From Macrostomum lignano (taxonomy: Eukaryota), in assembly GCA_002269645.1 (NCBI GenBank), contig NIVC01000094.1:558001-622000 (forward strand): a stretch of 64,000 bases of DNA, written 5' to 3'. Below the pieces are notes generated by a model. The model ran no database searches. It had not been told where the DNA came from and worked only from the letters and a program-made list of their open reading frames with translations. Both the position numbers and the translations under genes were made by a program. Shown one piece after another: positions 7,886 to 30,423 of this stretch; the first letter of the stretch is position 1; every line of letters begins with the position of its first letter.

Positions 7886-10800
7886 TCACGAGGTGCCGCC
7901 CGCCCCGCTGCTGCCAACAAAGCCGCTGCCGGACCCGACGCCGCCCACAACTCCGCTGCTGCCGGCTCCGCCGACGCTGGCACCGCTGGCGGCTCCGGGC
8001 ACGGCGGCGCCCAGGGTGGTGCCAACGCTGACGTGATGGTCGGGATAGTTGCAAGGCGACTGGTCAATCTGGTCGTAATAGATTGTCAGCGACTTCTGCT
8101 GGCGAGTCCAGGTCTTCGTGTCCCAGTAGTAATAGAATCCGCGCTCGCCCTGCGGCGCCGGGATCTTCTCAACATTCTGCTGGCAGCGGGTCACCCACAG
8201 CTTCTCGCTCTTGATCCAGCGCCACTCGCGCCTGTGCAGCTCCTTGGCGGCGCTGAGCTGCAGGTGGTCGCAGGTGCAGTTGTAGAACAGCCAGAACAGC
8301 GTCTCGAACTGCAGCTGGTCGAGCGGAGGCGGCGGCAATTTTTCGCGAATCTGACTGCCAACCAGGTACTCCTGTGGCACCGGATAGTCGATGTACTGCG
8401 GCTTGGCTAGGCACTGCTCAGCCCACGGAGAGCCCAGGCAGGAGTAGATCTCGCTGGGCAAATGCGGGCACAGGGTTCGGAGCATAATGCAGTGTGGTTG
8501 AGCATACTGACTAACAAGTAACTGAATGCGATTGGATTTAGAGCGAATTCGGGCATCTGGGTCACCGATTTGGGTATCCGGGTCACTGATTCGGGTATCC
8601 GGGTCACTGATTTGGGCATCTGGGTCACCGATTTGGGCATCTGGGTCACCGATTTGGGCATCTGGGTCACCGATTTGGGTATCCGGGTCACTGATTCGGG
8701 TATCCGGGTCACTGATTCGGGTATCCGGGTCACCGATTTGGGCATCTGGGTCACCGATTTGGGCATCTGGGTCACCGATTTGGGTATCCGGGTCACTGAT
8801 TCGGGTATCCGGGTCACTGATTCGGGTATCCGGGTCACCGATTTGGGCATCTGGGTCACCGATTTGGGCATCTGGGTCACCGATTTGGGTATCCGGGTCA
8901 CTGATTCGGGTATCCGGGTCACTGATTCGGGTATCCGGGTCACCGATTCGGGTATCCGGGTCACTGATTCGGGTATCCGGGTCACTGATTCGGGTATCCG
9001 GGTCACTGATTTGGGTATCTGGGTCACCGATTTGGGCATCCGGGTCACTGATTCGGGTATCCGGGTCACTGATTCGGGTATTCGGGTCACTGATTTGGGT
9101 ATCCGGGTCACTGATTCGGGTATCCGGGTCACTGATTTGGGTATCCGGGTCACCGATTTGGGTATCCGGGTCACTGATTTGGGCATCTGGGTCACCGATT
9201 TGGGTATCCAGATCACTGATTTGGGCATCTGGGTCACTGATTTGGGCATCTGGGTCACTGATTTGGGCATCTGGGTCACTTATTTGGGCATCTGGGTCAC
9301 TGATTTGGGCATCTGGGTCACTGATTTGGGCATCTGGGTCACCGATTTGGGCATCTGGGTCACCGATTTGGGCATCTGGGTCACTGATTCGGGTATCTGG
9401 GTCACCGATTTGGGCATCTGGGTCACTGATTTGGGCATCTGGGTCACTGATTTGGGCATCTGGGTCACTAATTTGGGCATCTGGGTCACTGATTTGGGCA
9501 TCTGGGTTACTGATTCCGGTATCTGGGTTACCAATTTGGGTATCTGGGTTACTGATTTGGGTATCTGGGTTACTGATTTGGGTATCTGGGTTACCGATTT
9601 GGGTATCTGGGTTACTGATTTGGGTATCTGGGTTACCGATTTGGGTATCTGGGTTGATTTGGGTATCTGATGATTTGGGTATCTGGGTTACTGATTTGGG
9701 TATCTGGGTTACCGATTTGGGTATCGGGGTCACCGATTTGGGTATCCGGGTCACCAATTTGGGTATCGGGTCACCGATTTGGGTATCCGGGTCACCAATA
9801 TGCTTTTCAAAGTTATTGATTCGGGTATCCGGGTCACTGATTCGGGTATTCGGGTCACTGATTTGGGTATCCGGGTCACTGATTCGGGTATCCGGGTCAC
9901 TGATTTGGGTATCCGGGTCACCGATTTGGGTATCCGGGTCACTGATTTGGGCATCTGGGTCACCGATTTGGGTATCCAGATCACTGATTTGGGCATCTGG
10001 GTCACCGATTTGGGCATCTGGGTCACTGATTTGGGCATCTGGGTCACCGATTTGGGTATCCAGATCACTGATTTGGGCATCTGGGTCACTGATTTGGGCA
10101 TCTGGGTCACTGATTTGGGCATCTGGGTCACTGATTTGGGCATCTGGGTCACTGATTTGGGCATCTGGGTCACTGATTTGGGCATCTGGGTCACCGATTT
10201 GGGCATCTGGGTCACCGATTTGGGCATCTGGGTCACTGATTCGGGTATCTGGGTCACCGATTTGGGCATCTGGGTCACTGATTTGGGCATCTGGGTCACT
10301 GATTTGGGCATCTGGGTCACTGATTTGGGCATCTGGGTCACTAATTTGGGCATCTGGGTCACCGATTTGGGCATCTGGGTTACTGATTCCGGTATCTGGG
10401 TCACCGATTTGGGTATCCGGGTCACCAATATGCTTTTCAAAGTTATTGATTCGGGTATCCGGGTCACTGATTCGGGTATTCGGGTCACTGATTTGGGTAT
10501 CCGGGTCACTGATTCGGGTATCCATGTCACTGATTTGGGTATCCGGGTCACCGATTTGGGTATCCGGGTCACTGATTTGGGCATCTGGGTCACCGATTTG
10601 GGTATCCAGATCACTGATTTGGGCATCTGGGTCACCGATTTGGGCATCTGGGTCACTGATTTGGGCATCTGGGTCACCGATTTGGGTATCCAGATCACTG
10701 ATTTGGGCATCTGGGTCACTGATTTGGGCATCTGGGTCACTGATTTGGGCATCTGGGTCACTGATTTGGGCATCTGGGTCACTGATTTGGGCATCTGGGT

Positions 10801-13248
10801 CACCGATTTGGGCATCTGGGTCACCGATTTGGGCATCTGGGTCACTGATTCGGGTATCTGGGTCACCGATTTGGGCATCTGGGTCACTGATTTGGGCATC
10901 TGGGTCACTGATTTGGGCATCTGGGTCACTGATTTGGGCATCTGGGTCACTAATTTGGGCATCTGGGTCACCGATTTGGGCATCTGGGTTACTGATTCCG
11001 GTATCTGGGTTACCAATTTGGGTATCTGGGTTACTGATTTGGGTATCTGGGTTACTGATTTGGGTATCTGGGTTACCGATTTGGGTATCTGGGTTACTGA
11101 TTTGGGTATCTGGGTTACCGATTTGGGTATCTGGGTTACTGATTTGGGTATCTGGGTTACTGATTTGGGTATCTGGGTTACCGATTTGGGTATCGGGGTC
11201 ACCGATTTGGGTATCCGGGTCACCAATTTGGGTATCGGGGTCACCGATTTGGGTATCCGGGTCACCAATATGCTTTTCAAAGTTATTGATTTGGGTATCG
11301 GGGTCATCGATTTAGTATCGGCAGGGTGACTGCTGAAAGCCATAACCATAGACTTACGAAGTATTATTCAGCGGCAAGCCCAAAGAGTTGAGGTCGATGC
11401 CGGGCGCTATGATAACAAAGTTGGGATTCTCGTCTCCCACTTTTATTAGCGACAACAGGCCGATCATGCCGAACTGGTCCCGAACCATGCTCGCCGGGAC
11501 GCCAGTAATGGAGCCGTTCTGGTGGTACACCACTGTGCTGCGACCCAGAGGTGTCATGGGGTCCGCTGAGCCGGGCAGACCCGCCGAAGCCGCCGCTGCA
11601 GCGGCCGTCCCGCCGTCGGCAAGGCTGCCGCCTGTCCCGGACACGCCAGCCGTCGCTAACGATGCTGAGTTCGGCGGCATGGCGACAGACGATGAGGCTG
11701 CAACGGAGCCAGGCGCGGCGGAAGTGGCCGGCTGAGTGCCCGGCAAAGCGGGGAAATCCTCCTGCTGGATGCTGAACTCCTCGGGTGCTTTGCTAGCCGC
11801 GGAAACGAAGTTAATGCGGCCGGACACTCCGGCCGAGGCTGGCCGGCCAAGCATGGGAAACTCGGACGGGTCGGGTAGCCGCTTCTGCCCGACAGGGGCC
11901 TGCAGCATCAAGCCGGGGATGCTCCGCGCTTGGCTGCCGCCGCTGCCGCTGGCCAAGCCGAGGCCGCTTCCGGGCGGGACGCCGGATGCCAGACGGCCGC
12001 TGCCGACGCCGACAATCCCGACGCCGCTGCCGCCGGCGCCTTGTAGCTTGCCCGAGGCGCTGATCTGGCGCGAATAAGTCGCCATGGACGAGGCTGGCGA
12101 GCCAACGGACGACAGCAGGCCGTCGCTGAAGTCTGCTGACGAATGGTCGAATAGCTTACTGGCGCGCTGCTGGTCCGGCTGCGAGGACGGGCCCGGCGCT
12201 CCCAGCTGCTGGGGGAACAGGCCGGAGTTCGGCTGCTTGCCCACTGCCGAGTTCAGCGGCATGGAGGATTGAAATCCTGCACCAATTATGCCGCCACCGC
12301 CACCGCTGCTCGATGACGGCACTGGGCTGGTGTTGCGCATCAGGCCGGGGAAGCCGCCGCCATCTGGCGACCAGCCGTATTGGTCCGTGTTGCTGAAGGC
12401 TCTGGGGACGGGGATGGGCGATTAGGAGATATACTACTGATACAGTAGCTTATAAATGATAATCTAGAGATACTACTATTACAGTAGCTTATAAATGATA
12501 ATCCAGAGATACTACTGATACAGTAGCTTATAGATTATAATCCAGAGATACTACTGATACAGTAGCTTATAAATGATAATCCAGAGATACTACTGATACA
12601 GTAGCTTATAAATGATAATCTAGCGATACTACTGATACAGTAGCTTATAAATGATAATCTAGACATACTACTGATACAGTAGCTTATAAATGATAATCTA
12701 GACATACTACTGATACAGTAGCTTATAAATGATAATCTAGAGATACTACTGATACAGTAGCTTATAAATGATAATCTAGAGATACTACTGATACAGTAGC
12801 TTATAAATGATAATCTAGAGATACTACTGATACAGTAGCTTATAAATGATAATCCAGAGATACTACTGATACAGTAGCTTATAAATGATAATCTAGCGAT
12901 ACTACTGATACAGTAGCTTATAAATGATAATCTAGAGATACTACTGATACAGTAGCTTATAGATTATAATCCAGAGATACTACTGATACAGTAGCTTATA
13001 AATGATAATCTAGCGATACTACTGATACAGTAGCTTATAAATGATAATCTAGACATACTACTGATACAGTAGCTTATAAATGATAATCTAAAGATACTAC
13101 TTATACAGTGGTTTAGTTATATCAGTTATACAGGTGGAAAAGTCAAGCGAACTCACGGTCCTAATCCTGCCATTGGATGGTTGAATTGTTGCGCATGGAA
13201 TAACGGCAAGGCGCTGGGTTCAATGCGAGGCTGCACTTGGAATTCAGG
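7886..13248 (-). CDS. CNOT2: CCR4-NOT subunit 2 (CNOT2/Regena), join(13248..13157, 12401..11358, 8453..7886). About 542 aa from the Met at 13173, possibly extended upstream.
   Basis: Conserved LPDPSEFPML and EFSIQQEDFPALPGTQ motifs; DQFGMIGLL..IKV..PN..IAPGIDLNSLGLPLN; NOT box SPWAE..YPVPQEYL..ETLFWLFY..LQLSAAKELHRREWRW..LWVTR..ERGFYYYWD..W..QKSLTIYYDQ. Both introns are GT-AG and phase 2 (GGACC|A GCC; ACT TC|C GAG). Confidence 0.92.
8548..11315. repeat. Intronic minisatellite of CNOT2, 21-bp unit (ATCTGGGTCACTGATTTGGGC), about 130 copies
   Basis: Occupies intron 8454..11357. It produces the 7-aa periodic ORFs (QISDPDA, IWVTDLG, TQMPKSV, WASGSLI). Confidence 0.97.
12428..13105. repeat. Intronic minisatellite of CNOT2, 39-bp unit (GATACTACTGATACAGTAGCTTATAAATGATAATCTAGA), about 17 copies
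   Basis: Direct reading, within intron 12402..13156. Confidence 0.95.
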
Positions 13249-13299
13249 CTGAAAATGCAATTAAAAAACTGTAATTAAAATAAACTATAGAAATCCTAT

Positions 13300-16200
13300 G
13301 TATACTTGTAAAAGGCGAAACTTGATGTAGGAACAAAAGATAAAATAAACAGTAGATCCAATGCTAATAGGATTCCTGGATGCTAAGGGAAATTCAGATA
13401 CATTTTATGGCTAAAAACCTTGACACCAGGGGTAATGTATTTTTAAGGGCTGCTATTTTTTAACCAATAGGCTCACATCTTTACTTTTTATTCAATGAAA
13501 TGCGCCTAGACAAATGCTAACCCCATCCCTTCAAGTTTGTGGGAATTAAGGCCCCCGAAATCCATGTTCTATAAACTTGATTCTTAATGCTCCACTTCCT
13601 TTAAAGCCAAAAAATCTGAGCACAACATGCTTGCAATTGCTCAAGCACCCCTGCCTTTCCTCAAGATGTGCCATATATTGTCCCATCTTTAACTCCCTCC
13701 CTTCATTTATGAGTTACAAGCCTACAAACCCAAGTATTTTTGACTCTTCAAACTAAAACATCTGTTCTCCAGTCCATCTAAAGCCCTCTCAAATTTAAAC
13801 AATATGCTCAATTGTTATGCCTCATTCCTCTGCCTTTCCTCAGAACACAACTGTCTCTAATTCCTTCCCGATATTAATGAGCAAAAATCCTGCACCAACA
13901 CAAAACCCATGACTAGTTCCAAATATTTTCCTTATATCAAAGCAACTATTCTATATTGAGATTATCAACTTTCTAACTCTGATTTGAACCAAATATTTGG
14001 TTGATTGGATTTGATTCTAAATATTCTGAATATTCATTGAATCTCTAGTCTAGTCATATATATAGGCCTATTTGTTATCTTTATATATATACCATATTGT
14101 CTTATTTTTTATGAAGTTAATTAATATACTAGTAGTTTGATATAATAAAATGGTATACATAAAATCTATAGATATTGCATAAAATGATGATTTGAGGTTT
14201 TGGCATATTGAGGTTATATCTTAAATAATAGTCTAGACCAATGTACATGGTTTACTAGAAAGTGTTTATGGTTAGCAATGCTAACCATTTGCTAACCATT
14301 GAGATTAAACACAGTACTCTTTTAAAAAGGTTTTTAAGTTAAATCTTTTAGATAGACCATATACAAGCTTTTTAGACTTTAGATGTTACAACTTCTTTAT
14401 AGTTTCTATAAAGAATTTTAAATAAAAAACTAAATAGTATTTATAAGATAAAAATACCAAAAAATAAACATTAAAAATCTAGTAAATATATTAACTTGCT
14501 AGCAAATCTTATTATTCAGATAATTGATTTTTTGCCATTTAACTATTTTAGTCATAGACATTTTGCTTAGACTTTGTAGTCTATATAGATCATTTTGCCC
14601 CAAAGCAAAATCAACCATAGAATAGTTTGGCCATATTAATTAAAAATTAATAGATTCAAACAAGCTAAAATAGTAACGATATACATAGTAGCAACTCTAC
14701 TGAGATTTTGAAAGTTGCACTATGGTAATTTTTGCCAAAACACTCTTAGTTTTATTAATATTTTTATTAAACTTTTTTACTTAGGCTGACCAATTTCTAT
14801 GTCCAATATATCATTTTTTAGCTTTTCTATTTCTAATCTGTTGATAAGAAAAGGTACAGGTCACATTGGCAAAAAGAAAATTTAGTAAGTCATTTTGGAA
14901 AAAGTCAGTTCAATGAAAGTCATTTCAGAGATCAGAGATTCAGAGAAAGTCAGTCATAAAAAGTTATAATAAAACATCTTTAAACAAACAAATTACAATT
15001 GTATTATGCTATTGATATCTAGGATATTTATTTAGGATAGTTTAGTATATTAAAAGTTATTTCTTAACTGAAAAAACAAAGCTAATTTACTAAAAAAGTA
15101 AAATGATATAGTCTATCAAAAATTATAAAAATATTTAATAAAAAAATTGGTTAAAAGTTGAAAAAAGTTTAATAAATGTCTTTAGAATTTTATATTTAAT
15201 TTTGTTAGAAATTATCATTTGTGTTTAATCAAAAATAAAGAAACTTTAATTTTTGTGAATATCACGATTTTAATATGGTTTTTTCATAAAGAAAATAATA
15301 TAATTTATTATAATCCCAATGAAGACCAGAAATTTATTTATAAAGTTTTTATCTATGAAATTTTGGCAATCCTTTACTTTTGCACATTTAATTATTTTTT
15401 TAAATAATGACTTTTTTAATTACTGCAAGTAAATATTTGAACTTGCGTAAAGGTAAGATGTCTACTAGTTTAAGGTGGCCAAAACCTACTATTGCTCTGC
15501 TATTTAAGTTTTGGCCATAGACAATTGCTCCTTGTTTTTTTGAAAAGGCAGTAAGACAAAAAGGATAGGTGTTGCATTCTTTGGTATATGCATGCTAGTG
15601 GAGTGGTTAACTCTATTATTGATTTTTATTACTAGCCTATGACCACCCCTCTCTATCAGTCTTTTCCCATGTATGCACTTGTGAGGATGGCTACATACTT
15701 GTAGACTGCCCAGCTAGACATACTAAATATATATGAGTCAGGAAGCCACTGGCCCGAGCACCTTTCTCTTTCTTAGTTGTTTGAAGATAGAATCTCAGAG
15801 TCTCAGAACATAATTGTTATTTTTACAACAATGGGTATTCTGAGAGATTTATTGCCTTGCTTGTTTTCTTATCAATCTTGAACAATAACTATTGTGCAAT
15901 CATGGCTGGATACCCTATAGTACCCACTAGTATAATTCCAATTGCAGATATTCAACCTGCAGCAAACCTTATATAACTTATACCTAACAATGTGTAAGCT
16001 TACTTATAGCCACCAACATGCCCACAATGCTGGACTCAGGCCTCAATCCAAAAAGGGTCCATTTTTGAGTCTAGCCATCTGCCTTTGACCCAGAAAATTA
16101 ATATTATATACTAGTAGGCAACGTAGGCCAAGCAAGAAGACACCTAGTAACAATATGAAAATATTACTATTTAGACCATTATGGATTGGCAAAACTTTAT

Positions 16201-17650
16201 TTACAATATCTATAGTTAGTATCTGCAAGATTATCTACTGCAGCTAGAGCTAGGAGGGCTTAGTGTCAATGTTAAAATCAATGAAAGCTATTTCTTTTAT
16301 TGCAAATAGGCCCTGCTATCAAGGCCAATGTTGGCTAGACCAGTAAGTTTAAAGTATAATCAAATTGCACTCTAACTGCTGCACAATGGTGGCCATACTA
16401 GATTGTAGTGCAACTAGCATCTTGCCCCGAGTGCAATAGTACATGCTGCCTGGGATTATAGATACAAGTAGCAAGCATACAATCAGCTGCCTAACTATCT
16501 AACAATTAACTACTAGCTGCATTTTATTGACCCCAACAACTTAAATATTTATATTAATACAATTAAGGACATATGAGCCTATGCTAAGACCTATTTTAAG
16601 GCTATTTATGGCATATCCAAGGCCCTGTTCAATATCCACCTAGATGAGTTTCTATAGCATTATTGCTACTTGTGCAACACCTTCAGCAACATTTTTCTGG
16701 GTGATACACTATTATAATACCTAATACAACCAAACATGATATAATAAACTTGCTAACTATTATTAAACTTTTATTGAAACTTTGTTCAAAATTTATTAAT
16801 GTTACATTTATAATATATAATTAAATCTGCAAAAGTAAAAGATTGCCAATTTTTTTATTTTCTTTCTAGTTTATTATATTTGCTTTTAAACTCTAATATA
16901 ATCCATGGTCAAGGTGCGCCATGTGCGCCGCAACAAATCCTTTATAATTTTTTAACTGTGCACCATGCGCCAAAAAATTTATGTATTACATTGACATATG
17001 GCGCACAATAAATTTTCTTCTGCGCCATTTGCACTGTGTATGCCAAAAATCCTTTGTGTGTACCACAATTTTGTATGAAATCTATCACCTTCCTGATTGT
17101 AGGATATAATTATATTGCAAATTTAGTCATTTGCAAAAACTTTTTAAAATATATTTTATTTAGATATTTGCAAGTTTTAGGACCTTTATTGAAATATTTA
17201 CAATATAAGATATAAACTAAAAATTGATATACTTTGCTTTATTCTAATAATATTCTTAATTAATAAACCTCAATAACAATATTATTATATTTAAGTTATA
17301 TAGAGCATACCTAGGCCGAAGCAAAAATCTATTCTTATTATAGCATTATATAGGCTTAGATATTTTAGAGGAAAAAATTAGGCCTACAGTCCCTACACCA
17401 AACAAAATTAGCAATATAATAGGAAAGATAATAAAATACAAAACAAATAGAATAATAGATATTAAGATGTGATATAAAATATGTGTAGCCCCTAGCTGCT
17501 AAGCTAGGCTAGGGCCAAGGCCTAGGTAGGCCTAAACTAATCTAAAATTAGGCCCTAATTATTTTTTTAACAATCAATTTGCAATATAATAAGGGCCTTA
17601 TCAAGGAAAATAGATTGATATTCAAGATATCCAAAGATCATTAGGAATGA
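13300..17650. other. AT-rich, CpG-depleted island of degenerate transposon-derived sequence upstream of, or inside a 5' intron of, CNOT2
   Basis: About 9 CpG counted by eye in 13321-16860, versus about 30 in the AT-rich 18841-19560. It contains a recognisable Merlin transposase relic. Confidence 0.75.
16019..16730 (+). pseudogene. Merlin (IS1016/ISXO2-like, DDE) transposase relic, heavily transition-mutated
   Basis: One frame 16019-16309 reads CPQCWTQASIQKGSIFESSHLPLTQKINIIY**AT*..TIMDWQNFIYNIYS*YL..LGGLSVNVKINESYF. After small indels it continues ILDCSATSILPRVQ*YMLPG..K*QAYNQLPNYLTINY*LHFIDP..INTIKDI*AYAKTYFKAIYGISKALFNIHLDEFL*. This matches family motifs SIRxGSxF, YWW, VDWxNF, GGPGxxVEIDES, VPDRSA, DEWRAY, TVNHSxxFVDP, NTIEGxW and HLDEFxWR (recalled, not searched). 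Confidence 0.88.
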
Positions 17651-20365
17651 AAAGTTTTGCATCCTCCACTGCACAGTGCACAGTCTAGATCATACATAGA
17701 CTGGTATATCTGTTGCTTGCTTGCTATAGTTGGCATTGGATTGGACACTGGCAACGATAAAAAAATTGATATAAATATGCTATGTTTCGTTTTATTATTA
17801 TGCCTGCGCTTTATTTTTTCGAATCAGGTGTTTTGGACGGATACAAAAATGTCAGATTATTCTTCAAGAAACCCACACATTTCCAATTAATGCAAAGAAT
17901 TCTTTGGGCTTGGTTTTTGGGGGATTCAGTCTTCCATGACTTGTGATTCTTTTCTTATGTTTATTATCATAAAAATTACTTCTCTAAAACTTGCTTGTTT
18001 AAAATTTCTAACATTTCTATCAGGCTCAGAAATGTTTAGGAACAGACCGTCCAAGCTGCTGGTTGAACAAATAAAGAATCGCTGAATCGCTGATTTTAGA
18101 AAAAATAATTTTTTTGGATTTTTTTAACTTTTAAACAAAACTTACGTTGTCTAGAACAAGAAATAGATTGAAATAGTTTCGTAGCAGAAGATTTAAAATT
18201 TTTGCATTTATTTACCACTATGCCAAGAAACAAATTTGTTTCTAATTGCTCCTACTCGTACGCCGATTTGATGATTAACTTTTCAACACTACATTCAGAA
18301 TATATTGTTGCAATTATTGATTATACTTAAGGAATCTTACAGCTACTGCTAACTGGGTTTTATAAACGATTGTCTCAAAATAGTGCGAGCAAATTTTGTT
18401 TAAGGGTTTAGTAACTTAATAAGTAGCAAAAATTTTTATGCTGCAAAGCCAGAGCGAGAGACATGGCACAGAGGGCGACGCGCAGATAAATAAGCGGGTG
18501 AGCAAACACCCCCCACCCCACGAAGGGGTAGAGAGGAAGGCGCACAAAGCGGCACAAGTACAGCGCGAGCTGGAGTGGATGGCTAACACCCATTTCACTT
18601 CACTCATAAAGGAGCCCTAAGAGAAATGGAAGGCATTATACCCATTACAATATTGTTACTATTTGCTGTAGTACACAATTATTACCTATCACAGTAATGC
18701 TACTTTTGTACATTTAAGTACATAAAACATGCGATTTGCCTATAGTTCTGTACTACATTTATACTCATAGTATTCCTACACAAGTATGTATGTTATGTAT
18801 GTTTATAACAAGTAGTTAAGTAAAGACCGCTTGGTTTTCCTGAAAGACATGATTTAAGACCATCGGTGACATCGGTCCTAAACTATAGCTCATGAGTATA
18901 AGGAAGTAGAGAACGAAAACGATACCCAAAATATCCTCATTGGAAACAAAGTCGACTAACTAAGGCGGGTAGTCTTAGTTAAGTACAAAATAAACGACGA
19001 TACAAAAAGTACGTTTTAGTTTCTGATACGAGCGTATTTAGATTTGCAACCATAACAGAGTTAAAATCTTTACGTTAGATGAAAACGTATATTTAAGTGC
19101 TGAAATATTTTAATTAAATTTTATACCGTTACAGGTATAGAGATTAGAGATATCCCAATAGTAGCAAACAAGAAAGGCCGTCCCAAAATTAATAAGAAAT
19201 AAAGATGCGCTCTTAGCTAGAAACAGTTAAGCATAACGTGCAACAATAAAAGCGAAGCCAAACAAAAATCGCAGCAATAAAGTTGTAACAAAACGACACA
19301 ACAGGAACATTAATTTTATAAATATAAATAGCTAAAACTTCTTTCGGTCTGATAAATATGCATCAACAACGATAACTTCTAGCATAGCGAAATGCTACTT
19401 CCACATACACTAAGTATCTAAACAGGTAACGCATAATAGAAACAATTTTGACTACCAACTAACGACCAGAAGAGAGCATCGTGCAGCTACAATCAAGCTG
19501 GGCTTAGAGGTGGAGCATACCGTATAATACTTTGCCACGCATTAACGAATAAGCAGACGACCACACGAGTTAAGACAATTTATCTGCTCGCAAGCTGACG
19601 GACAACTTTGATGTTTTTCTATTTCTTCTCTAGAACTCATATACTCAGCAACATTGAAACACGCCACACTTTTCCCCAGTGAGCAGTGTCTCGATCATCG
19701 TCTATCACCTGGCCAACCATTTTGAGATGAAAAAATGCTTGGAAAAAAAACAATGACAACCGGGCGGAAGCTTCAATCCATCCAATTTTCGCCCTCCGAT
19801 CGTCCCAAGTCCCTCCTCACTCAGCCCAACTCTGCATCGCGTGGCGCAAGTTGTGTCACTCAAAAATCAACACTGAGCTGGAATTTACTGCGCACTCTCA
19901 AAGGTGGCGACTTTTTAATGTTGTTGAGTATATAATCCAGAGCAACACTAATAGCTAAAACTAACTTTATGTTTAAGCGGCAACGGCATTAAAAAGCTAG
20001 AATGGATTCGAAGTAATGACAAGGATAATACGGCAAAGTTCAGTCCGCTGTTAAAATTGTTTAAGCAATTGCGCTGCCAGAAAACATGCAAGTGGGACAC
20101 AAAACAATAAAGTAAATTTTAACAAATTAAAAACTAAGAGAAGTACATGCGGACAGCCGATTCGCTATGAGGCCAGTTTTATAGTAAACCTTTTACATTG
20201 TACATTACAGACTCGTATTTTTCGTGTTAATTTACATTATTATTTTATGGTTTTGCACTTCGCTAACAGTCTGACCTATGAACTCGATTTTTTGGTTTGT
20301 TAAAGTCTAAACACATCCTAATTAGATTCGCGATTAAGAGTAAAAAAGTGCGCCACTTGTTGCAT

Positions 20366-20899
20366 TTACGAGCGCACCCCGGATGCAGCATTTTCTGCTA
20401 CAATTGGAGCAGCAGCAGTTGGAGCATCCACAGCAGCAGGTGGAGCGGCGGCAGCTTCTCCGCCATTGTTGACTGCCTGAGGCTGAGCTGCTGCCTTAGT
20501 GGCAGCGGCAGCGGCGGCCACCTCGGTGGAATCGGCCGGCGGCAGGTCGGACTTGGCCACCTGGACGAAGCCAACAAGAAGGTCGCCATCCGCGCCCTGA
20601 GCAGCCACGGCGGCTTTGACCTCGGCCGAGTCGGCGGGCGGAACGTCAGCGCCGTTTACCATTTCGAAATCATCGGTGGCAACATCCCTGACTGCAGCTG
20701 GCGGCTCCGCCGGCGCCTTAGCAGGCGATGTGGACCGCGGCTTCGCCGACGGAGTTTTCTGCTTTTTAGCCGGAGATGGGGCGGCAGGCGGCGGTGGCGG
20801 AGGCTGCGGCCGGGATGCCAGACGGCCGGAGCGGCGCTGCGGCTGGGCGTTGGCCGAGTCGGCAGCGGCGGCGGCGGCGGCAGAACGTTTTCGTGGCAT
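20366..20899 (-). CDS. Intronless 177-aa disordered protein: basic N-terminus with an HMGN-like PQRRSGRLASRP motif, Ala/Pro/acidic C-terminus
   Basis: GC-rich, CpG-rich ORF with the same Ala-rich style as the other genes. ATG at 20899 is preceded by TTTTATAAG|CAAC (possible acceptor). MPRKRS start; internal duplication ADVPPADSAEV/SDLPPADSTEV. Confidence 0.75.
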   Translation of the reverse strand: MPRKRSAAAAAAADSANAQPQRRSGRLASRPQPPPPPPAAPSPAKKQKTPSAKPRSTSPAKAPAEPPAAVRDVATDDFEMVNGADVPPADSAEVKAAVAAQGADGDLLVGFVQVAKSDLPPADSTEVAAAAAATKAAAQPQAVNNGGEAAAAPPAAVDAPTAAAPIVAENAASGVRS

Positions 20900-21394
20900 G
20901 TTGCTTATAAAATCAGCTGATTGCACTTTAAAGCTGAGCTCTATGGCTGAAAGTTGATGAAAACAGCGCATTACTTAAATTTGACTCAAATTCCTAATTG
21001 CTTAACAGCAAAAAGTCAAGCTACTTTGTCAGATTTTTACTGCCCGTACATAAATACTTTTTAGTCGATGAACTGGAATTTAAATGTTGGAATTGCTTTG
21101 CCATTTGTCATTCTAAGTCAAAACTCAAGATGCCAATTTTGAATGCCAGGATGCCAGACTGACATCGGTCAAAAAATATCAGCATCTCTACCTTATGCCT
21201 TAACATTGTTGAGCCTCTCTGATCCACAGAAGATGCAAGTCTACAGATTGCTCAGATTTGAAGATCCTAAGAACCTAATATACTTATATAATTACGAGGC
21301 CAACTCTTCCGTTGGAGGAGAAACGGGAAGAACTCCCATCACCGGAATCCATCAGCTGAATCCTATGACCCAAATCCCATCATTCAAGTCCTCT

Positions 21395-21595
21395 CTAAAA
21401 TCCATCAAATTCCCCTCTGTGAAACAAAACTGTATCAAAATCCTCTCCGTGAAACAGAACTCCATCAAAATTCCCTCCGTGAAACAGAACTCCATCAAAA
21501 TCCTCTCTGTGAAACAGAACTCCATCAAAATCCTCTCCATGAAACTTAAATTCATCAAAATCCTCTCTGTGAAACATATATTCATCAAAATTCAC
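21395..21595. repeat. Short minisatellite, 30-bp unit (AAAATCCTCTCTGTGAAACAGAACTCCATC), about 6 copies
   Basis: Direct reading; KILSVKQNSI periodicity. Confidence 0.85.
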
Positions 21596-24299
21596 TGTTA
21601 AACGAATATCTATCAATATTATCTCCTTCAAGCAAAAATCCATCAACTTAATCAACAGACTCTGTTAAATTGGAGTGTATTAAAAAGGCTTTCTAATTGA
21701 ATGGCTTAAATATATGCAAAGAAAAGGATTCAGTGGTTAGGGTTAGGGTTAGAGCTGCACAGTGCTTCCTGTTGAAAGGCGCCGATAATAAAAAATGGAA
21801 CCAATTGAACAAATTAATTGCAAAATCGATTTTCAGTCAGTCAGTATCAGTCTCAGTTAAAGTTAACAAAATGATTGCGCAATCTAAATCAACCCTCCAA
21901 TACACAGCGGCAGTTAGAAATTGAAGCCCCAAATTTATCTATTGCGTCTTGCAAAAATAAGTACAATCTGCAGAAAGTTAAAAGCATGAAAATCGTTTTT
22001 TGAATGCTGTGCTTTTAGTTTTCATACTTTAAGCAAACAACTTATATCAGCATTGAAAGATCTTTCCAGCAATATAAGTCTCTTCTCTCAAAGTTCAAAA
22101 CTCGAGGAACAGTTTGTTTGAAATTTCCCAGTTTAAAGCATTGAATTTGTGAGTGTACATTCACTGCCTGCTACAGTGAGAGGCTTGCAAGTTCATGTAT
22201 TGAATTTGACTGCCCGCCAGTTAGCAAGGGTCCAAGTGTACACACACAGCCACTTAGAATGCCCCCATCCCCCCACTGGAGAGAAAATGCACTGCCGAGA
22301 TAGGAAAAAGTTGTGGCGCAATCACTCAAAATTGATGCAAATTTTCAGTTCAGAGCAGAAAAAGTGGCCAAAGAAGGTTAAGAAAACAGTTTTCTGCTTT
22401 TTTAACAGACTTAATTTTGAAAATTTCAACATTAAAATAGCCTATTTTTTGCGTAGGAAAATTCTGCATTGATATATATAAGTCCCACATTTGAGTTGCC
22501 AGCTGTTTAGGAGGAGATACATGTTAAACCTGGCCAGTCGATTGATCCACTCAGCTTTAGATATAAGATTGAAATATCCAATAAAATATGAATTTAAAAA
22601 GTACAGAACTTATATTAGATAGCATCTGGCTTGGAAAACTGGGATAGCAATTTGACAACTAGGATGAAAAATTCAAGATCCAAAATTTTAAGCTGATGTG
22701 TTATAAAATACATAGACTAGATAACTACACTTTGGTGCCAAACACTGATTTTAAGCCATATGATAAATGTCTAGTTGTAAGGCTTGTTATATATTAGAAT
22801 GTTATTATTAGTGACTGCAATAAAATTTGCCTTGACACTTTTTTAATAAATATTTTTTATAATTTTGAGGTAGGCCTTGTTATTAAGAAATGTTTTCTCA
22901 GAAAGTGTTGCATTTGAAAGTATGCTAATTAGTTTAAATGCATAAAATATTAGAAATACTGTAAATATTTTAATTTTTTTAAATCACACTAAAAGGGCTT
23001 ATAAATACATGAGCAGCTAGCAGGAGACGAATCAACTTGCCTTGTGCTTGAGACTTGTTCCATTCAAAACCTTGAGCAATACTACTGAGTTAAGTTATTT
23101 AAAAGCATCAAAGCCCCAAGATTGGGAGAAGTTGATCCATTCTTAGAGAACAATATATCCCAATTCATAATCTGAAAAGTCACCTTAGAAGGCAGAAATC
23201 CTACCACAGAGTAGAGTAATCTAGACTCAGGGTCTGAGAAACCTGCCTCAGGCAAAATACCTAGCAAGTAAGCTGTGACCCTCTGATCCTAAGAATTCCT
23301 AGGACTGAATGAATAAAAATTGTTAGAGTAGTATAGAAATAGGGTCGACAGTTCCATAAGACTGCTCAGGCTAGTAGATAAGTACATGCACTACCAGTAG
23401 ATAATTACATATGCTACCAATATAAAAAGTAAACATATAGGCAATAAGTACATTCATGCAACATCTGTAAAAGTACAAATAATATAAAAATCATTATAAC
23501 AACTTGGTGGCTGCTTTTAAAAAAGAAATTTATAGGGAAAGAAGAAACAGCCTTATCACAGCTGGTATCAGAAGTAAGATCATCCCAGAGGATAGAAATT
23601 AGCCCTGGGACAAATTTGTTTTTTTTATTTATATATATTTTAAAGAAGATAGCAAATTTATTGTTTCTTGTTATTTTCAAGTAGTAGTTAATTTTAGGTG
23701 TGAATTTTTTTACAAATTTCTTTTATAATCATATGCATTTTGTTTTTTTGTGGCACAAAATTTTTTGCCCATTGGCTAGAGTATTAGCACCCACTAAAAT
23801 GCAGAATCTATAGTAGAATTAGAATAGAATAATAGTTAAAAATGCAGAATTTGAAGCAAAATGATAAATTGTAAATTTAAAAAAAATAAAGTATAGAAAA
23901 AGGCAAAATATTTGAATCGATCAAAAATAAGTAAATTTCTAAATTGATATATATATCTATGAGTAAAAAATATTTTTATTTAAAAAAATACATTTAGCCT
24001 TTACAGCAATATAACCATATAAAAATAAATTTATAGTATAATATGATTCTACATTACGGCTAGGAATACTAAACTAAACTATAAATAGCAACATATAGGC
24101 CCTATTAGGCTATTAGTAATTAGGCCTACTAAAAGTAATAAATATAGTTTCCTTCATGAATAATATAGCTGATAGGCAAGCACGTAGCCAGGATTCATGT
24201 TAGAGGGAAAAGATAGAGATATAAATCCATCTTCAATAGAAGTGATGGAAGCAAAATATAAAAGCAATAAAAAATCTCTAATGTCCCCCTCTTTGTGTC

Positions 24300-25518
24300 C
24301 ATTGCTACACAGATAGATCCCTAAAAGATGGCTTTTACCATAGTCAGGATCATGTCATTGTATATGCCAGAATAAAAAGTCCCCTAAAAAAATCTATGCC
24401 ACTTCATACTGAAATGTATACCAAGGTCCAAGGAACTTACGCCAGGTTTTCTAGGCTTTGCAACAATAAATGACCTTTTTTGCATGTTACATTTTTAACA
24501 ATAAAAATTTAACAAATGTGTGGTTTTCCTTTAAAGTAAATTGGCTTACAGATAATGCTAACAAAAATCAATTTTTTGTTTAAGTTTTTTTTTAAAAATC
24601 AACACAATTAGTTTGCATGGAATTTTAAATTTTTATAAATCACGAATAGTTATGAACTTTCATCTTTGCTTACTAGTTTTACGGTTTTTATGATTTTATA
24701 ATAAGATTCTGAGGTTACGGCGTTATGCCAACAATTGTTAATATTAACTTTAGCATAAAGGTACGCTGCTTGGCATATTTACGCCACGGCATCACGCCAA
24801 AAGGTACGCCAAATATATTTTGCCTCATTTTTTTATGCCAATTGTATGCCAAAAAAGTAAAATTTTCAATTGTACGCCGGAAATTTCCGGCGTAATGTAC
24901 ATCATCTTGACTATGAGGCCTTTATAGCTTTGGGGTCTGCATCCTCCCCAATGGCTATATGCTAGCTATGCATGCCTAGCACACTGGAAGTCTCTATTAT
25001 CTTTCAGAATGAGGTTCTCACTATTAGCTCCTACATAGCAGTGCTGATTCACTTGCAAAACAAGGAAGTGGCAACTCCCTTCATATATCCTTGCCTTTGG
25101 CTCTGATCTCTGCAGCTATAATCAATTGCAACATTGATACTTGGACCTCTGCCTTGCATAGGGACAGATGGATGAACCTTACTAACTATTGCCAATCTTG
25201 TGCAACAGTCCTTTGTCTATCTTAAAAGCTCAAAACTATTCTTCTGAACCAAAGCAGAAAGGATATCCAAGCTTTTGCTATAACCCTCATTAGCCACAGC
25301 CATAGCTACTTTGCTAGGCACTGCTTTTTCCAGGGTGACATCCAGAATGAACTGTCTCTTGTGGCTATGACAATGAAGATGTACAGCTCTTCGTCTGTGA
25401 ATGTTCATTCTTCACTAGAAAGTGGCTAAACTACCTTGGTCAAAATCTATCTAATGATGATGTTTGCAGACTCAAAAATATCCCACAACTCATCATATTC
25501 CTTTGAGCAACTAGATAA
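24300..25518 (+). mobile_element. 3' relic of a non-LTR retrotransposon (RNase H plus C-terminal CCHC-like zinc knuckle), transition-mutated and split by an insertion
   Basis: YTDRS at 24306 (YTDGS-like); DYEAFIALGS at 24909 (DSxAALxAL-like); one frame 25043-25355 reads ADSLAKQG..RWMNLTNYCQSC..LLNQSRKDIQAFAITLISHSHSYFARH (WxxxxxCRQ, LLxxSRxDIR, LTGHG); CGYDNEDVQLFVCEC at 25360. Confidence 0.72.
24437..24895. mobile_element. About 460-bp non-autonomous insertion in the LINE RNase H, with TACGCC subterminal repeats and a terminal perfect 22-bp palindrome
   Basis: Ends are TTACGCC (24437) and GGCGTAA (24895). Palindrome TACGCCGGAAA|TTTCCGGCGTA at 24873-24894. RNase H motifs lie on both sides. 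No clear TSD. Confidence 0.5.
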
Positions 25519-25929
25519 GCCTCTTTCTTCTCCAATAAAAATGCTGCCCTTCACCATTGCCAAACTGGGTCACCAAGGTTTAGTAGAAAGGGCAGCCTAT
25601 AGACTTGAATTGAAAGCTATTTCAATAAGCCATGGGGATAACTGGAAATTATTGACATAGATCCGTGTGGATAAAATTGGAATTATTGGCATGGGACCGT
25701 GGGGATAAGCACTTCCAATTAATAAATGGAAGAAAAAATGACAAGTGCAAGAATCGCGAAAAAGTTTTAGACCTAGGGCCTGGCAATCTCCTAAATTACT
25801 GCATTAAATTATTTTTCAGTTTTTTAAACTTTTCACTACACTAGGTGACTAGCAGACAAAAATAGAATATTTTTAGACTCATAGAGACGAGCAAGGCATA
25901 AATGCAGTTTCCTGCGTTAAATTATTTTA

Positions 25930-26077
25930 TCGTAAAATTACGAAATTGTTTCTCCGGAAAAACACGTCGCCACATGAATTCGCCAAGGTAGCCTCGAAGA
26001 GCCCATCACTGGTAGGTACCATACATCGTGCGGAAGTTGCGCTTCAAGTGGGCCCACAACCCTTCGATAGTGTTGGT
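25930..26077 (-). pseudogene. Second Merlin-type transposase fragment (C-terminus), CpG-rich and not hypermutated
   Basis: TNTIEGLWAHLKRNFRTMYGT..GYLGEFMWRR. It is apparently disrupted by a 4-bp TACC duplication and a 1-bp deletion rather than by transitions. Confidence 0.8.
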
Positions 26078-26518
26078 CGGTGCAGGTGGACGTTGCGTTG
26101 GAGCTGAAATAAAGGCAAATTTAAACGAAAAAATAAGTTAACGCGGGAAACTAACTGAACAAAAACGTTCGAAGAAAAACGAAGTCAAAAAAATACTTGT
26201 ACCTTATAAGAGATACCTAAAGACAATTTAAAATACATTTAGGTTAATTAAACAACTTTCTTACCAAGTTATTAATGATCTGTGTCCATTTTTGTGTTTA
26301 AATTTGTTTATGTTTGGTTTAAATAGCAACGCAATTTAATAGTTCAAGGGTTTAATAAATGAATTTATTTGTACAACTCGTATATCGTACGCATCATAGA
26401 CGGATCATCAATTAAGTAGAATTACTCGAATAAACCTAAAATCATCGTGAAATAATAACCTTTTATTATTTTTAATAATAAAATTTATTTATAAAATAAC
26501 ATTCTTCATTTTTTTATC

Positions 26519-29500: not shown

Positions 29501-30423
29501 CCAAAAAACGAATTTTCATAAAACTTGCCCCCGATTTTTGGATTTCCCCATATATGCTAGAAAATTTGAATATACAGAGCAGAAAGATCTGGTATAAACT
29601 ATTAGTATACAAATTGGCATTTAAAAGGCCTGTTATACCCTTTGGCATACTATTTGGGATAGTGCAGAACAAGCAAAGGGATAATTAGGGACTCCACTAT
29701 ATGAGCTCAAGTTGACAGGCCCTTTATTTTCAATATAATTGTTTAATACTATATTGTTAGGTTGACTGACTTGTTAGATTTGTTATGCTTCTCTAATAAT
29801 CTTTTAATTAAGGCTGCTGACTCCAAGCGAGAGGAATTTAGAAAGTACTTGGAAAAGGCTGGTGTGTTGGATGCCCTGACTAAAGGTAAGCATCTTAATA
29901 ATCTTTTTTACTAATCGAAGTCTCACTATATGCTAGAAATGCATTGCATTGCCATCTTACCAAATTCTCAAATCCAGCTACTTATCATAAATCGGTCACG
30001 ATTCCTTGCAATTCACCCACGCTCTCCAACTGCAGTGCTTGTTGGCCTGTACGAAGAGCCAGAGAAGCCCAACAATGCGCTGGAGTTTCTCAAGCAGCAC
30101 CTGGGCACTGCCGGGCCAGACGCCCCAGACGTTGAGGCTATGAAAGTTGAGATCACAGAGCTGAGGACCCGGGTTGAGCAGCTCGAGGCTGAGAATCAGG
30201 AGCTGCGCGAGAAGGTAGGCCACATGCGGCTCGCGAAGCCTCTCTAACCAGCCCTCGCTTCCTTTAAAACTTCGCGATAGCAATCCCATCTGCTCAACGT
30301 TGGTGTCTCAGATCTCTCTCTGAGGTTCCATAACTAATCGTTGAATATTAATTTGCCATTAAAACAAATTTTCAGGTGCAACAGTACGACCCGGCTGGCG
30401 GAGCTGCTGCAGCCGCTGAGTGA
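26519..30423 (+). CDS. MYCBP: c-Myc-binding protein (MYCBP/AMY-1), join(26519..26533, 29813..29885, 30036..30214, 30376..30423), 104 aa
   Basis: MTSYK|AADSKREEFRKYLEKAGVLDALTK(V)LVGLYEEPEKPNNALEFLKQHLG..LEAENQELREK|VQQYDP..E*. All introns are GT-AG with matching phases. The five-codon exon 1 is the least certain part. Confidence 0.92.
27001..27204. mobile_element. hAT-type MITE (204 bp) in MYCBP intron 1
   Basis: Left TIR CAGTGACAAATCTAG; right TIR (reverse complement) TAGTGGCTGATCTAG; 8-bp TSD GACTTAAG / GACTTAAT. Confidence 0.75.
28258..29140. repeat. 178-bp tandem repeat, 5 near-identical copies, in MYCBP intron 1
   Basis: AATGTG anchor at 28258, 28435, 28613, 28791 and 28969. Confidence 0.95.

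What the first reader, a model, noticed from the sequence alone, without database searches (positions are those of the whole stretch)
16019..16730. RIP-like C->T / G->A hypermutation of a Merlin transposase in an animal genome
Seen: about 97 codons stay in one frame with no indel, yet are full of stops and motif substitutions. Against recalled Merlin/ISXO2 motifs, nearly every change is explicable as a transition. Examples: YWW = TAC TAG TAG; GGPGVxVEIDES = GGA GGG CTT AGT GTC AAT GTT AAA ATC AAT GAA AGC (P->L, G->S, E->K, catalytic D->N); VPDRSA = ATA CTA GAT TGT AGT GCA; EWRAY = AAG TAG CAA GCA TAC; NH = AAC TAC; NTIEGTW = AAT ACA ATT AAG GAC ATA TGA; FLW = TTT CTA TAG. Both C->T and G->A occur, so both strands were hit. 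Many hits are in CpA/TpG context (TGG->TAG, CAT->TAT, T-GAA->T-AAA), not just CpG. Established: transition-only, CpA-biased mutation of repeats is the hallmark of fungal RIP, whereas animal methylation decay is mostly CpG-limited. Inference: a transposon-targeted methylation/deamination system that permanently inactivates TEs. I am not aware of one described in animals. The ancestral sequence is reconstructed from memory.
Basis: partly seen in the sequence, partly recalled or inferred. Interest (0 to 1): 0.92.

Follow-up and report, generated by a model that had tools for sequence, protein, structure and literature searches.

The report
Deamination-hypermutated dead Merlin transposon copy
A dead Merlin DNA transposon in an unidentified animal genome was disabled almost entirely by C-to-T changes in the sequence contexts that DNA methyltransferases prefer, which resembles fungal RIP, but one copy cannot show a repeat-targeted defence.

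Summary
Window 15365-16847 is a 1483-bp Merlin/IS1595-type transposon with 31-bp inverted ends (5'-GG...CC-3'). Real transposases match its raw DNA (tblastn E = 6e-29). It has 16 in-frame stops (12 TAG), two frameshifts and mutated catalytic residues. In the well-aligned parts, 20 of 24 changed conserved codons need only C>T/G>A; intact relatives give 5 of 24. The fitted C>T rate is about 0.4 per C/G site, and every other class is 0.05 or less. Minisatellite variants in the same window show Ts/Tv of about 0.9.

Hits depend on context. By 3' base: CpG 9/12, CpA 14/33, CpT 3/11, CpC 1/24. A 5' G protects (1/17). Both strands are hit, interleaved. Ordinary decay is therefore rejected, and the changes are not limited to CpG.

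The context order matches DNMT3-type enzymes (CpG>>CpA>CpT>CpC). The standard RIP index is negative (1.4-1.5), and CpG, not CpA, is the top target. The left flank is also CpG-poor. No second copy was available, so dependence on repeats is untested. Most likely this is methylation-linked cytosine deamination of a silenced transposon. True RIP, a free deaminase and base-calling errors at methylated cytosines remain open. The host is an animal, possibly a spiralian; the species is unknown.

The parts
15365..16847 (+). Whole decayed Merlin (IS1595-superfamily) DNA transposon copy, 1483 bp
   Evidence: The termini are 5'-GG ... CC-3' and bound a 31-bp inverted repeat. The transposase remnant lies inside. 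GC is 0.34 and CpG o/e is 0.09, with only 4 CpGs.
15365..15395 (+). Left terminal inverted repeat GGCAATCCTTTACTTTTGCACATTTAATTAT
   Evidence: It matches the reverse complement of 16817-16847 at 29 of 31 positions, with 1 transition and 1 transversion. Five of its 9 C/G sites are in the protected contexts (5' G or 3' C), so its good preservation fits the same process (inference).
16817..16847 (-). Right terminal inverted repeat
   Evidence: The flanks GAAATTTT and AATTTTTT match at 5 of 8 positions, so an 8-bp target-site duplication cannot be confirmed.
16019..16306 (+). Transposase remnant, segment A: 96 codons in one frame, from the C..C motif to VEIDES..RK
   Evidence: tblastn against P0002 and P0004 and alignment to 50 relatives. 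The stops are TAG at 16112, 16115, 16124, 16145, 16172 and 16217, and TAA at 16148.
16280..16282 (+). First catalytic aspartate of the DDE triad, now AAT (Asn). Inferred GAT>AAT, a G>A in a CpG context
   Evidence: The column is 100% D in relatives. The catalytic Glu of NTIEG is now AAG (Lys) at 16565-16567.
16308..16460 (+). Transposase remnant, segment B, shifted to frame +1 (..W...VPDRSA..LPG). Its alignment is uncertain
   Evidence: There are frame changes at about 16306/16308 and 16460/16463. Most of the inferred non-transition changes fall here.
16463..16732 (+). Transposase remnant, segment C, back in the first frame (EWRAY, VNH, HTNTIEG.W, EFMW)
   Evidence: H>Y occurs three times, and W>stop at 16469, 16574 and 16655.
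12500..18000 (.). CpG-poor, AT-rich domain (GC 0.20-0.39, CpG o/e 0-0.55) that contains the element and its flanks
   Evidence: CpG returns to o/e of about 1 at 18.0 kb. A cluster of six CpGs lies at 16917-17023, just right of the element.
25934..26149 (-). Comparison piece: a second, short Merlin-derived fragment from a different lineage. It is GC- and CpG-rich, and its conserved W, H and E codons are intact apart from one in-frame TGA
   Evidence: tblastn against P0004 gives E = 2e-11, and P0108 gives 64% identity over 39 aa. The local CpG o/e is 1.59.

Best explanation
This is a dead copy of a Merlin cut-and-paste transposon. It was inactivated mainly by cytosine deamination, not by ordinary random decay. 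About one third of its G:C pairs became A:T on both strands, while other substitution types stayed near zero.

The hits follow the sequence preference of DNMT3-type cytosine methyltransferases. CpG is hit most, then CpA, then CpT. CpC is almost never hit, and a G before the C protects it.

The most likely mechanism is as follows. The silenced element was densely methylated de novo in the germ line at CpG and also at CpA/CpT. The methylated (or enzyme-bound) cytosines were then deaminated to thymine. This produced W>stop, H>Y, D>N and E>K changes that destroyed the catalytic triad.

Shown: the identity of the element, the spectrum, the contexts and the involvement of both strands. Inferred: that methylation was the intermediate, that it acted in the germ line, and that it was directed at the transposon rather than at the surrounding region.
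For: Identity.

Spectrum:
- 20 of 24 changed conserved codons in the well-aligned segments need only C>T/G>A.
- Intact relatives run through the same pipeline give 5 of 24.
- ML rates are C>T 0.37-0.42 against <=0.05 for all other classes.
- In-window baseline from 18 minisatellite arrays: C>T 57, C>A 33, C>G 23, T>C 36, T>A 25, T>G 20, with no context preference.

Context, normalised by sites at risk:
- 3' base: G 9/12, A 14/33, T 3/11, C 1/24.
- 5' base: A 10/17, T 8/17, C 8/29, G 1/17.
- As rates, CpA:CpT:CpC is about 1:0.6:0.08. DNMT3A in vitro gives 1:0.43:0.08, with CpG far higher (PMC9530848).

Whole-ORF composition agrees: C/(C+T) before A is 0.37 against 0.56-0.67 in intact Merlin ORFs. 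Before G it is 0.04 against 0.27-0.52. Before C it is unchanged at 0.54.

CpG o/e is 0.08-0.09, with TpG/CpA at 1.2. The G>A and C>T events are interleaved, which suggests a process acting on both strands of duplex DNA.
Against: - There is only one copy and about 27 inferred events, so the context fractions have wide errors.
- If CpA methylation were only about 5% of CpG methylation, as for mammalian DNMT3A, spontaneous deamination could not raise CpA mutation more than 10-fold over background. This reading needs either unusually dense non-CpG methylation or enzyme-assisted deamination, and neither is documented in animals.
- No methylation data and no DNMT gene are available for this genome, and the species is unknown.
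- Across 1-kb bins of the window, the CpA-versus-CpC signal does not track CpG depletion (Spearman 0.12-0.18). Other CpG-poor patches therefore do not visibly share the non-CpG component.
- The ancestor is inferred from a family consensus at about 50% protein identity, not from sister copies.
Confidence: 0.5

Rival explanations
1. A true RIP-like defence. A homology-sensing process detects duplicated DNA and has a DNMT-family enzyme (like fungal RID/DIM-2) deaminate cytosines in both copies. The element was hit because it was repeated.
For: The load is almost purely C>T/G>A, with about a third of C/G sites hit and very little other divergence. That looks like a burst, as in RIP. CpA>CpT>>CpC is also the Neurospora order (PMC3318451). 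Both strands are hit. A 170-220-bp Merlin fragment nearby is untouched, which would fit a minimum-length rule of about 400 bp.
Against: Dependence on repeats is untested, since no second copy is available. CpG is the top target, unlike in Neurospora. The RIP index (CpA+TpG)/(ApC+GpT) is 1.40-1.49, so not RIP-positive, and TpA/ApT of 1.1 does not differ from the flanks. The flanking non-Merlin DNA is also CpG-poor. RIP is known only from fungi (PMC9246332).
Confidence: 0.17
2. Editing by a free cytidine deaminase (AID/APOBEC-like or another deaminase family) acting on exposed single-stranded or double-stranded transposon DNA.
For: The hypermutation is pure C>T. TGG>TAG stop codons are a classic APOBEC3G-type outcome. 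AID/APOBEC-like deaminases exist in some invertebrates (PMC5956068). A 5' G is disfavoured, as for many APOBECs.
Against: There is no strand coordination: G>A and C>T alternate along the element. The strongest determinant is the 3' base (G>A>T>>C), whereas APOBEC specificity lies mainly in the 5' base. All CpGs are destroyed, which points to methylation. A survey found no editing clusters in 19 invertebrate genomes or in DNA transposons (PMC4866542).
Confidence: 0.12
3. Assembly artefact: systematic base-calling errors at methylated cytosines in a long-read assembly read as C>T/G>A, so the 'mutations' are really 5mC positions.
For: It would explain a pure transition pattern with essentially no other divergence, a methyltransferase-like context and two small indels.
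Against: Long ORFs elsewhere in the window are intact: the GPCR (371 aa), the dsRBD protein and the CNOT2 box. Base-level quality is therefore good. The element's overall GC has dropped to that of its surroundings. The CpG-poor state extends over 5.5 kb, as expected of real long-term decay. I have no information on the sequencing platform.
Confidence: 0.08
4. Ordinary neutral decay of an old pseudogene in an AT-rich, CpG-methylated region. The apparent transition excess comes from the reader explaining differences from remembered motifs.
For: The flanks are even more AT-rich (GC 0.20-0.30) and CpG-poor. With the middle segment included, the fitted equilibrium GC (0.27) equals the flank GC. Mismatches across the aligned terminal repeats and adjacent bases are 1 transition and 5 transversions.
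Against: The objective test against 50 real relatives still gives a C>T-only pattern in the well-aligned segments. The same pipeline gives no such bias for intact relatives. Unambiguous non-CpG sites are hit: H CAY>TAY in 3 of 4, and W TGG>TAG in 3 of 7, while CpC/GpG sites are hit in 1 of 24. The in-window baseline Ts/Tv is 0.92.
Confidence: 0.05

Closest known systems
Merlin superfamily of eukaryotic DNA transposons (related to bacterial IS1016/IS1595; Pfam DDE_Tnp_IS1595, PF12762)
   Same: The transposase remnant aligns along its whole catalytic region with animal ISXO2-like/Merlin proteins. The element has 31-bp terminal inverted repeats that start 5'-GG, and its size is about 1.5 kb.
   Different: The copy is dead: it has 16 stops and 2 frameshifts, the catalytic D is now N and the catalytic E is now K. 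The target-site duplication cannot be recognised. The nearest proteins found share only 30-34% identity with the raw translation, and no DNA-level relative was found.
Repeat-induced point mutation (RIP) of Neurospora crassa and other Ascomycota; RIP-like TpCpG hypermutation of Pucciniomycotina
   Same: The changes are almost exclusively C>T/G>A, on both strands, and affect a large share of cytosines in a transposon. Among non-CpG sites the order is CpA>CpT>>CpC. The result is stop codons and permanent inactivation.
   Different: CpG is the most heavily hit context. Bulk CpA/TpG are not depleted, so the RIP index is negative. Dependence on duplication is untested. The host is an animal, and no RID/DIM-2-type gene has been examined.
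Methylation-driven CpG decay of transposons in animals with 5mC (5mC deamination, CpG>TpG/CpA)
   Same: CpG o/e is 0.08-0.09 with an excess of TpG/CpA. The element lies in a CpG-poor patch of a genome whose CpG content is mosaic.
   Different: More than half of the inferred events are at non-CpG cytosines (CpA 14, CpT 3, CpC 1, against CpG 9). Other substitution classes are nearly absent. Slow CpG decay alone does not produce this.
Non-CpG (CpA) methylation by DNMT3A/DNMT3B in vertebrates
   Same: The rank order is the same, CpG>>CpA>CpT>CpC, and so are the relative CpA:CpT:CpC rates (PMC9530848).
   Different: In vertebrates the level is a few percent of CpG methylation and is not known to leave a strong mutational footprint. 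No CAC or CAG preference is seen here: the base after CpA varies.
APOBEC3 hypermutation of retroelements in vertebrates
   Same: G>A changes that turn TGG into TAG, as dense hypermutation of a mobile element.
   Different: Here the pattern is not strand-biased, the element is a DNA transposon with no reverse transcription, the host is probably an invertebrate, and the 3' base dominates the context.

Membership tests
Merlin superfamily (DNA transposon) | Transposase with a DDE_Tnp_IS1595 domain | tested here: met
   The raw DNA matches PF12762-annotated proteins by tblastn at E = 6e-29. Direct Pfam and NCBIfam scans of the decayed translation found nothing.
Merlin superfamily (DNA transposon) | Terminal inverted repeats of 24-462 bp that begin 5'-GG (PMC8101967) | tested here: met
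   The 31-bp repeats at 15365-15395 and 16817-16847 match at 29 of 31 positions and end GG...CC.
Merlin superfamily (DNA transposon) | 8- or 9-bp target-site duplication | tested here: inconclusive
   The flanks GAAATTTT and AATTTTTT match at 5 of 8 positions in low-complexity A/T sequence.
Merlin superfamily (DNA transposon) | Intact DDE catalytic triad (an active element) | tested here: not met
   D of EIDES is now AAT (N) at 16280. E of NTIEG is now AAG (K) at 16565. The second D lies at the frameshift junction near 16460. This is a dead member.
Repeat-induced point mutation (RIP) | Mutations almost exclusively C>T/G>A | tested here: met
   20 of 24 changed conserved codons in the well-aligned segments. 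ML C>T rate of 0.37-0.42 against <=0.05 for the other classes. Intact relatives as control give 5 of 24.
Repeat-induced point mutation (RIP) | Preferred dinucleotide target (CpA in Neurospora) | tested here: inconclusive
   CpA 14/33 is far above CpC 1/24 (P = 0.002), but CpG 9/12 is higher still.
Repeat-induced point mutation (RIP) | Composition indices: TpA/ApT >= 0.89 and (CpA+TpG)/(ApC+GpT) <= 1.03 | tested here: not met
   TpA/ApT is 1.10-1.12, but the flanks are about 1.0. The second index is 1.40-1.49. CpG decay feeds CpA/TpG, so this index is confounded here.
Repeat-induced point mutation (RIP) | Acts only on duplicated sequence (>~400 bp, >80% identity) | not testable with these tools
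   No other copy exists in the window. The metagenome search with the terminal repeat gave only a chance match inside a bacterial gene.
Repeat-induced point mutation (RIP) | RID/DIM-2-type DNMT-family machinery | not testable with these tools
   The host species is unidentified, and no such gene lies in the 64-kb window.
CpG-methylation decay | Strong CpG depletion with TpG/CpA excess | tested here: met
   CpG o/e is 0.08-0.09 and the CA/TG odds ratio is 1.19-1.20.
CpG-methylation decay | Excess mutation limited to CpG | tested here: not met
   18 of 27 context-assigned events are non-CpG. They include unambiguous CAY>TAY and TGG>TAG changes.
AID/APOBEC editing | Strand-coordinated clusters (G>A on one strand) | tested here: not met
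   There are 18 G>A and 9 C>T, interleaved along 16050-16659.

The most novel reading that the evidence does not exclude
An animal, possibly a free-living flatworm-like spiralian, has a germ-line process that recognises transposon copies. It converts their cytosines to thymines wholesale in CpG, CpA and CpT contexts through a DNMT-family or deaminase enzyme. This would be a functional analogue of fungal RIP that permanently kills mobile elements.
Probability: 0.25. Interest if true: 0.9.

Novelty: new variant of a known kind. Interest (0 to 1): 0.68.

Why it matters
RIP-type mutational genome defence is regarded as fungal (PMC9246332). A survey of 19 invertebrate genomes and of DNA transposons found no deaminase-type hypermutation (PMC4866542). 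In animals, the methylation-driven decay of transposons described so far is a CpG phenomenon.

This copy shows a DNA transposon in an animal that lost about a third of its G:C pairs by transitions alone. The methyltransferase-like context reaches well into CpA/CpT. If this is general in the genome, there are two possibilities. One is an unusually dense non-CpG methylation of transposons in an invertebrate germ line. The other is enzyme-driven deamination used as a defence. Either would change how transposon control and the origin of AT-rich, CpG-free genome patches are understood in that lineage.

The question is directly testable with the whole genome and a methylome. If instead the changes are base-calling errors at 5mC, the locus is still a useful flag for an assembly problem and for heavy CpH methylation.

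Tried and rejected
- Searches with the raw translation, with stops as X or recoded to W/Q, found nothing in Pfam or NCBIfam. With stops as X, the word-indexed protein search also found nothing. Homology became testable only after I fetched real relatives with a partly de-mutated query. That query was used only to fetch sequences. All tests used the raw DNA.
- A remembered Merlin-like sequence used as a tblastn query missed the element but found the second fragment at about 26 kb.
- DNA of the closest relatives (L001, L002) has no nucleotide similarity to the element, so no DNA-level ancestor is available.
- The self-comparison of the window found only tandem arrays and no second copy.
- An exact search of metagenome contigs with the terminal repeat hit a bacterial trpE/pabB-like gene by chance.
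- Species identification failed. Two exact look-ups of window proteins found nothing. Rfam found nothing. One protein search was wasted on too strict a threshold. The profile-free search of the GPCR gave only relatives at about 30% identity, from Macrostomum and Tubulanus.
- Standard RIP indices do not flag the element.
- A window-wide test for coupling of CpG loss and CpA loss was negative, so I do not claim that other CpG-poor patches are hypermutated.
- Comparing the two terminal-repeat arms is too small a sample to say anything about the spectrum.
- A genetic-code variant (TAG read as Trp) was rejected. The same copy has D>N and E>K at catalytic residues and H>Y at invariant histidines.
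- The N-terminal ~80 residues of the transposase could not be found upstream.
- Six-frame translations of the flanking CpG-poor patches were prepared but not scanned. The Merlin remnant itself is invisible to Pfam, so the scan would have had little power.


Full report
**What is there.** The region reads in one frame as a protein-like sequence full of stops. There are 16 stops in 237 codons: 12 TAG, 3 TAA and 1 TGA. On its own, the translation is not recognisable to Pfam, NCBIfam or the word-indexed protein search. Recoding the stops as W/Q did not make it recognisable to Pfam or NCBIfam.

I therefore wrote a partly de-mutated query, used only to fetch sequences. It returned 1101 real proteins carrying PF12762 (DDE_Tnp_IS1595). 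These come from sponges, molluscs, echinoderms, cnidarians, rotifers and arthropods. Searched against the untouched window DNA, they give tblastn E = 5.6e-29 for P0002 (34% identity, 16016-16696) and 6.3e-28 for P0004. The remnant is therefore a real Merlin/ISXO2-like transposase.

**Anatomy.**
- A 31-bp inverted repeat matches at 29 of 31 positions and begins 5'-GG and ends CC-3'. This is as defined for Merlin (PMC8101967). It bounds a 1483-bp element at 15365-16847.
- An 8-bp target-site duplication cannot be confirmed.
- The coding remnant has 96 codons in one frame (16019-16306). A +1-frame stretch follows (16308-16460), and then 90 codons return to the first frame (16463-16732). There are therefore two frameshifts.
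- The catalytic Asp of EIDES is now Asn and the catalytic Glu of NTIEG is now Lys.
- The N-terminal ~80 residues were not found.

**Is the change spectrum unusual?** I aligned the frame-corrected translation to 50 relatives. Where at least 70% of relatives agree, I took the family residue as ancestral.
- In the two well-aligned segments, 24 such columns have changed, and 20 of them need only C>T or G>A.
- The same procedure applied to two intact relatives, each left out of the consensus, gives 5 of 24. The method itself does not create the bias.
- A strand-symmetric maximum-likelihood fit over conserved codons, without the frameshifted middle, gives C>T at 0.37-0.42 per C/G site. The other classes are C>A <=0.01, C>G 0, T>C 0.05-0.14 (depending on the codon prior), T>A about 0.03 and T>G 0.
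- With the poorly aligned middle included, C>T/(C>A+C>G) is still 5.3, with a bootstrap range of 2.2-33.
- For an in-window baseline, I counted distinct variants among units of 18 minisatellite arrays: C>T 57, C>A 33, C>G 23, T>C 36, T>A 25 and T>G 20. That is a Ts/Tv of 0.92 with no context preference.

Ordinary decay would have brought some 50 non-C>T changes along with the roughly 22 C>T changes seen. At most about 5 are present. That number is no more than expected from normal divergence within the family.

**Context.** I counted only C/G sites where a transition would change the amino acid, and normalised by sites at risk.
- By 3' base: CpG 9/12, CpA 14/33, CpT 3/11 and CpC 1/24 (CpA against CpC, P = 0.002).
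- By 5' base: A 10/17, T 8/17, C 8/29 and G 1/17 (P = 0.008).
- Sites whose context is fixed within the codon agree. His CAY>TAY occurs in 3 of 4, Trp TGG>TAG in 3 of 7 and Cys TGY>TAY in 1 of 3. Pro CCN first base is hit in 0 of 5, and Gly GGN second base in 0 of 5 outside the middle segment.
- Whole-ORF composition agrees independently. The share of C among pyrimidines before A is 0.37, against 0.56-0.67 in intact Merlin ORFs. Before G it is 0.04, against 0.27-0.52. Before C it is unchanged at 0.54. After G it has risen to 0.58, against 0.44.
- The base after CpA varies, so there is no CAG or CAC rule.
- On the coding strand there are 18 G>A and 9 C>T, interleaved.

**What speaks against calling it RIP.**
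- The standard index (CpA+TpG)/(ApC+GpT) is 1.40-1.49, where RIP requires <=1.03. TpA/ApT (1.10-1.12) is no higher than in the flanks. The first index is confounded, because lost CpGs become CpA/TpG.
- CpG is the main target.
- The CpG-poor state is not confined to the element. The 1.5 kb to its left has 3 CpGs where about 23 are expected. The whole stretch 12.5-18.0 kb is CpG-poor, and CpG returns to expectation at 18.0 kb.
- Across 1-kb bins, the CpA-versus-CpC signal does not follow CpG depletion. I cannot say that other CpG-poor patches share the non-CpG component.
- No second copy of the family is in the window, and none could be fetched. The 'repeat-induced' part is untested.
- A short Merlin-derived fragment of another lineage at 25934-26149 (minus strand) is CpG-rich and keeps its conserved W, H and E codons. 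The process is therefore not universal. This could reflect age, length or local state.

**Mechanism.** The rank order CpG>>CpA>CpT>CpC is that of DNMT3A and DNMT3B. Converted to rates, the ratio CpA:CpT:CpC here is about 1:0.6:0.08, close to the 1:0.43:0.08 measured for DNMT3A (4.9%, 2.1% and 0.4% of the CpG rate; PMC9530848). CpG hits are saturated, because one hit destroys the site. A far higher true CpG rate is therefore compatible with the data.

This points to a methyltransferase-type enzyme as the agent that chose the sites. The step from methylation to mutation is inferred. If CpA methylation were only a few percent of CpG methylation, spontaneous deamination would not raise CpA mutation more than 10-fold above background. 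The data therefore need either dense non-CpG methylation or enzyme-assisted deamination, as proposed for RIP.

A free deaminase is less likely. The events are not strand-coordinated, and the 3' base dominates. I could not exclude base-calling errors at methylated cytosines in a long-read assembly. Intact long ORFs elsewhere in the window argue for good base quality.

**Host.** The window encodes an intronless rhodopsin-type GPCR, a CNOT2-type NOT box (E = 1e-25 to human CNOT2) and a dsRBD protein. The best GPCR relatives, at about 30% identity, are from the flatworm Macrostomum lignano and the nemertean Tubulanus. The host is thus an animal, perhaps a spiralian, but the species is unknown. According to a review, Macrostomum keeps DNMT1 and DNMT3, whereas Schmidtea has lost them, and no methylome of a free-living flatworm was available (PMC9246332).

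**Comparison with the literature.** Full-text searches found no report of RIP-like hypermutation in animals. A survey of 19 invertebrate genomes and of DNA transposons found no deaminase-type clusters (PMC4866542).

**Verdict.** It survives an objective test, a method control and an in-window baseline. This copy did suffer context-specific cytosine-deamination hypermutation beyond CpG, but a dedicated repeat-targeted system is not shown. I rate it a new variant of a known kind: methylation-linked C>T decay extended into CpA/CpT, RIP-like in outcome. Interest is 0.68. The most novel reading is a RIP analogue in an animal, with a probability of about 0.25.

Noticed in passing
window 1-64000 (e.g. 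1-1795, 8547-11265, 36038-37569, 45026-46645, 51078-52826, 59024-62699): About 27 different minisatellite arrays (periods 9-178 bp) cover about 40% of the window. Many have strong purine/pyrimidine strand asymmetry, which gives the region a subtelomere-like look.
   Followed up: partly
window 7886-10525 (-): An 879-aa open frame. A 21-bp tandem repeat (ISDPDAQ units) runs in frame into a CNOT2-type NOT box, E = 1e-25 to human CNOT2. Probably only the NOT box is a real exon.
   Followed up: partly
window 47478-48593 (-): An intronless rhodopsin-family GPCR of 371 aa at 57% GC. Its closest relatives share only about 30% identity (Macrostomum lignano, Tubulanus polymorphus FMRFamide-receptor-like).
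   Followed up: yes
window 25934-26149 (-): A second Merlin-derived fragment from a different lineage. It is GC- and CpG-rich, is preceded by a splice-acceptor-like ttatttcag, and has one in-frame TGA. It is not hypermutated.
   Followed up: partly
window 35331-36026 (+): A 231-aa ORF with two double-stranded-RNA-binding motifs (dsrm, E = 6e-20).
   Followed up: no
window 29930-30247 (+): An ORF whose sequence (..LYEEPEKPNNALEFLKQHLG..) resembles a MYCBP/AMY-1 exon. This rests on recall only and was not tested.
   Followed up: no
window 20366-20971 (-): A GC-rich (0.63) ORF starting MPRKRS...PQRRSGRLASRP. It looks HMGN-like by eye but has no Pfam match.
   Followed up: no
window 16917-17023: A cluster of TGCGCCA / TGGCGCA motifs carrying six CpGs lies about 70 bp to the right of the transposon end, inside otherwise CpG-poor DNA.
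   Followed up: no
window 12500-30000: GpC is over-represented (odds ratio 1.4-2.0) in all AT-rich DNA, whatever the CpG level. CpG itself is patchy: near-zero patches abut patches at expectation with sharp edges.
   Followed up: partly
L003 3548-3589 and L004 1664-1705: The 22-nt terminal-repeat pattern matched two near-identical AT-rich metagenome contigs. The match lies inside an anthranilate/aminodeoxychorismate-synthase-like gene and is a chance hit, not a transposon.
   Followed up: yes
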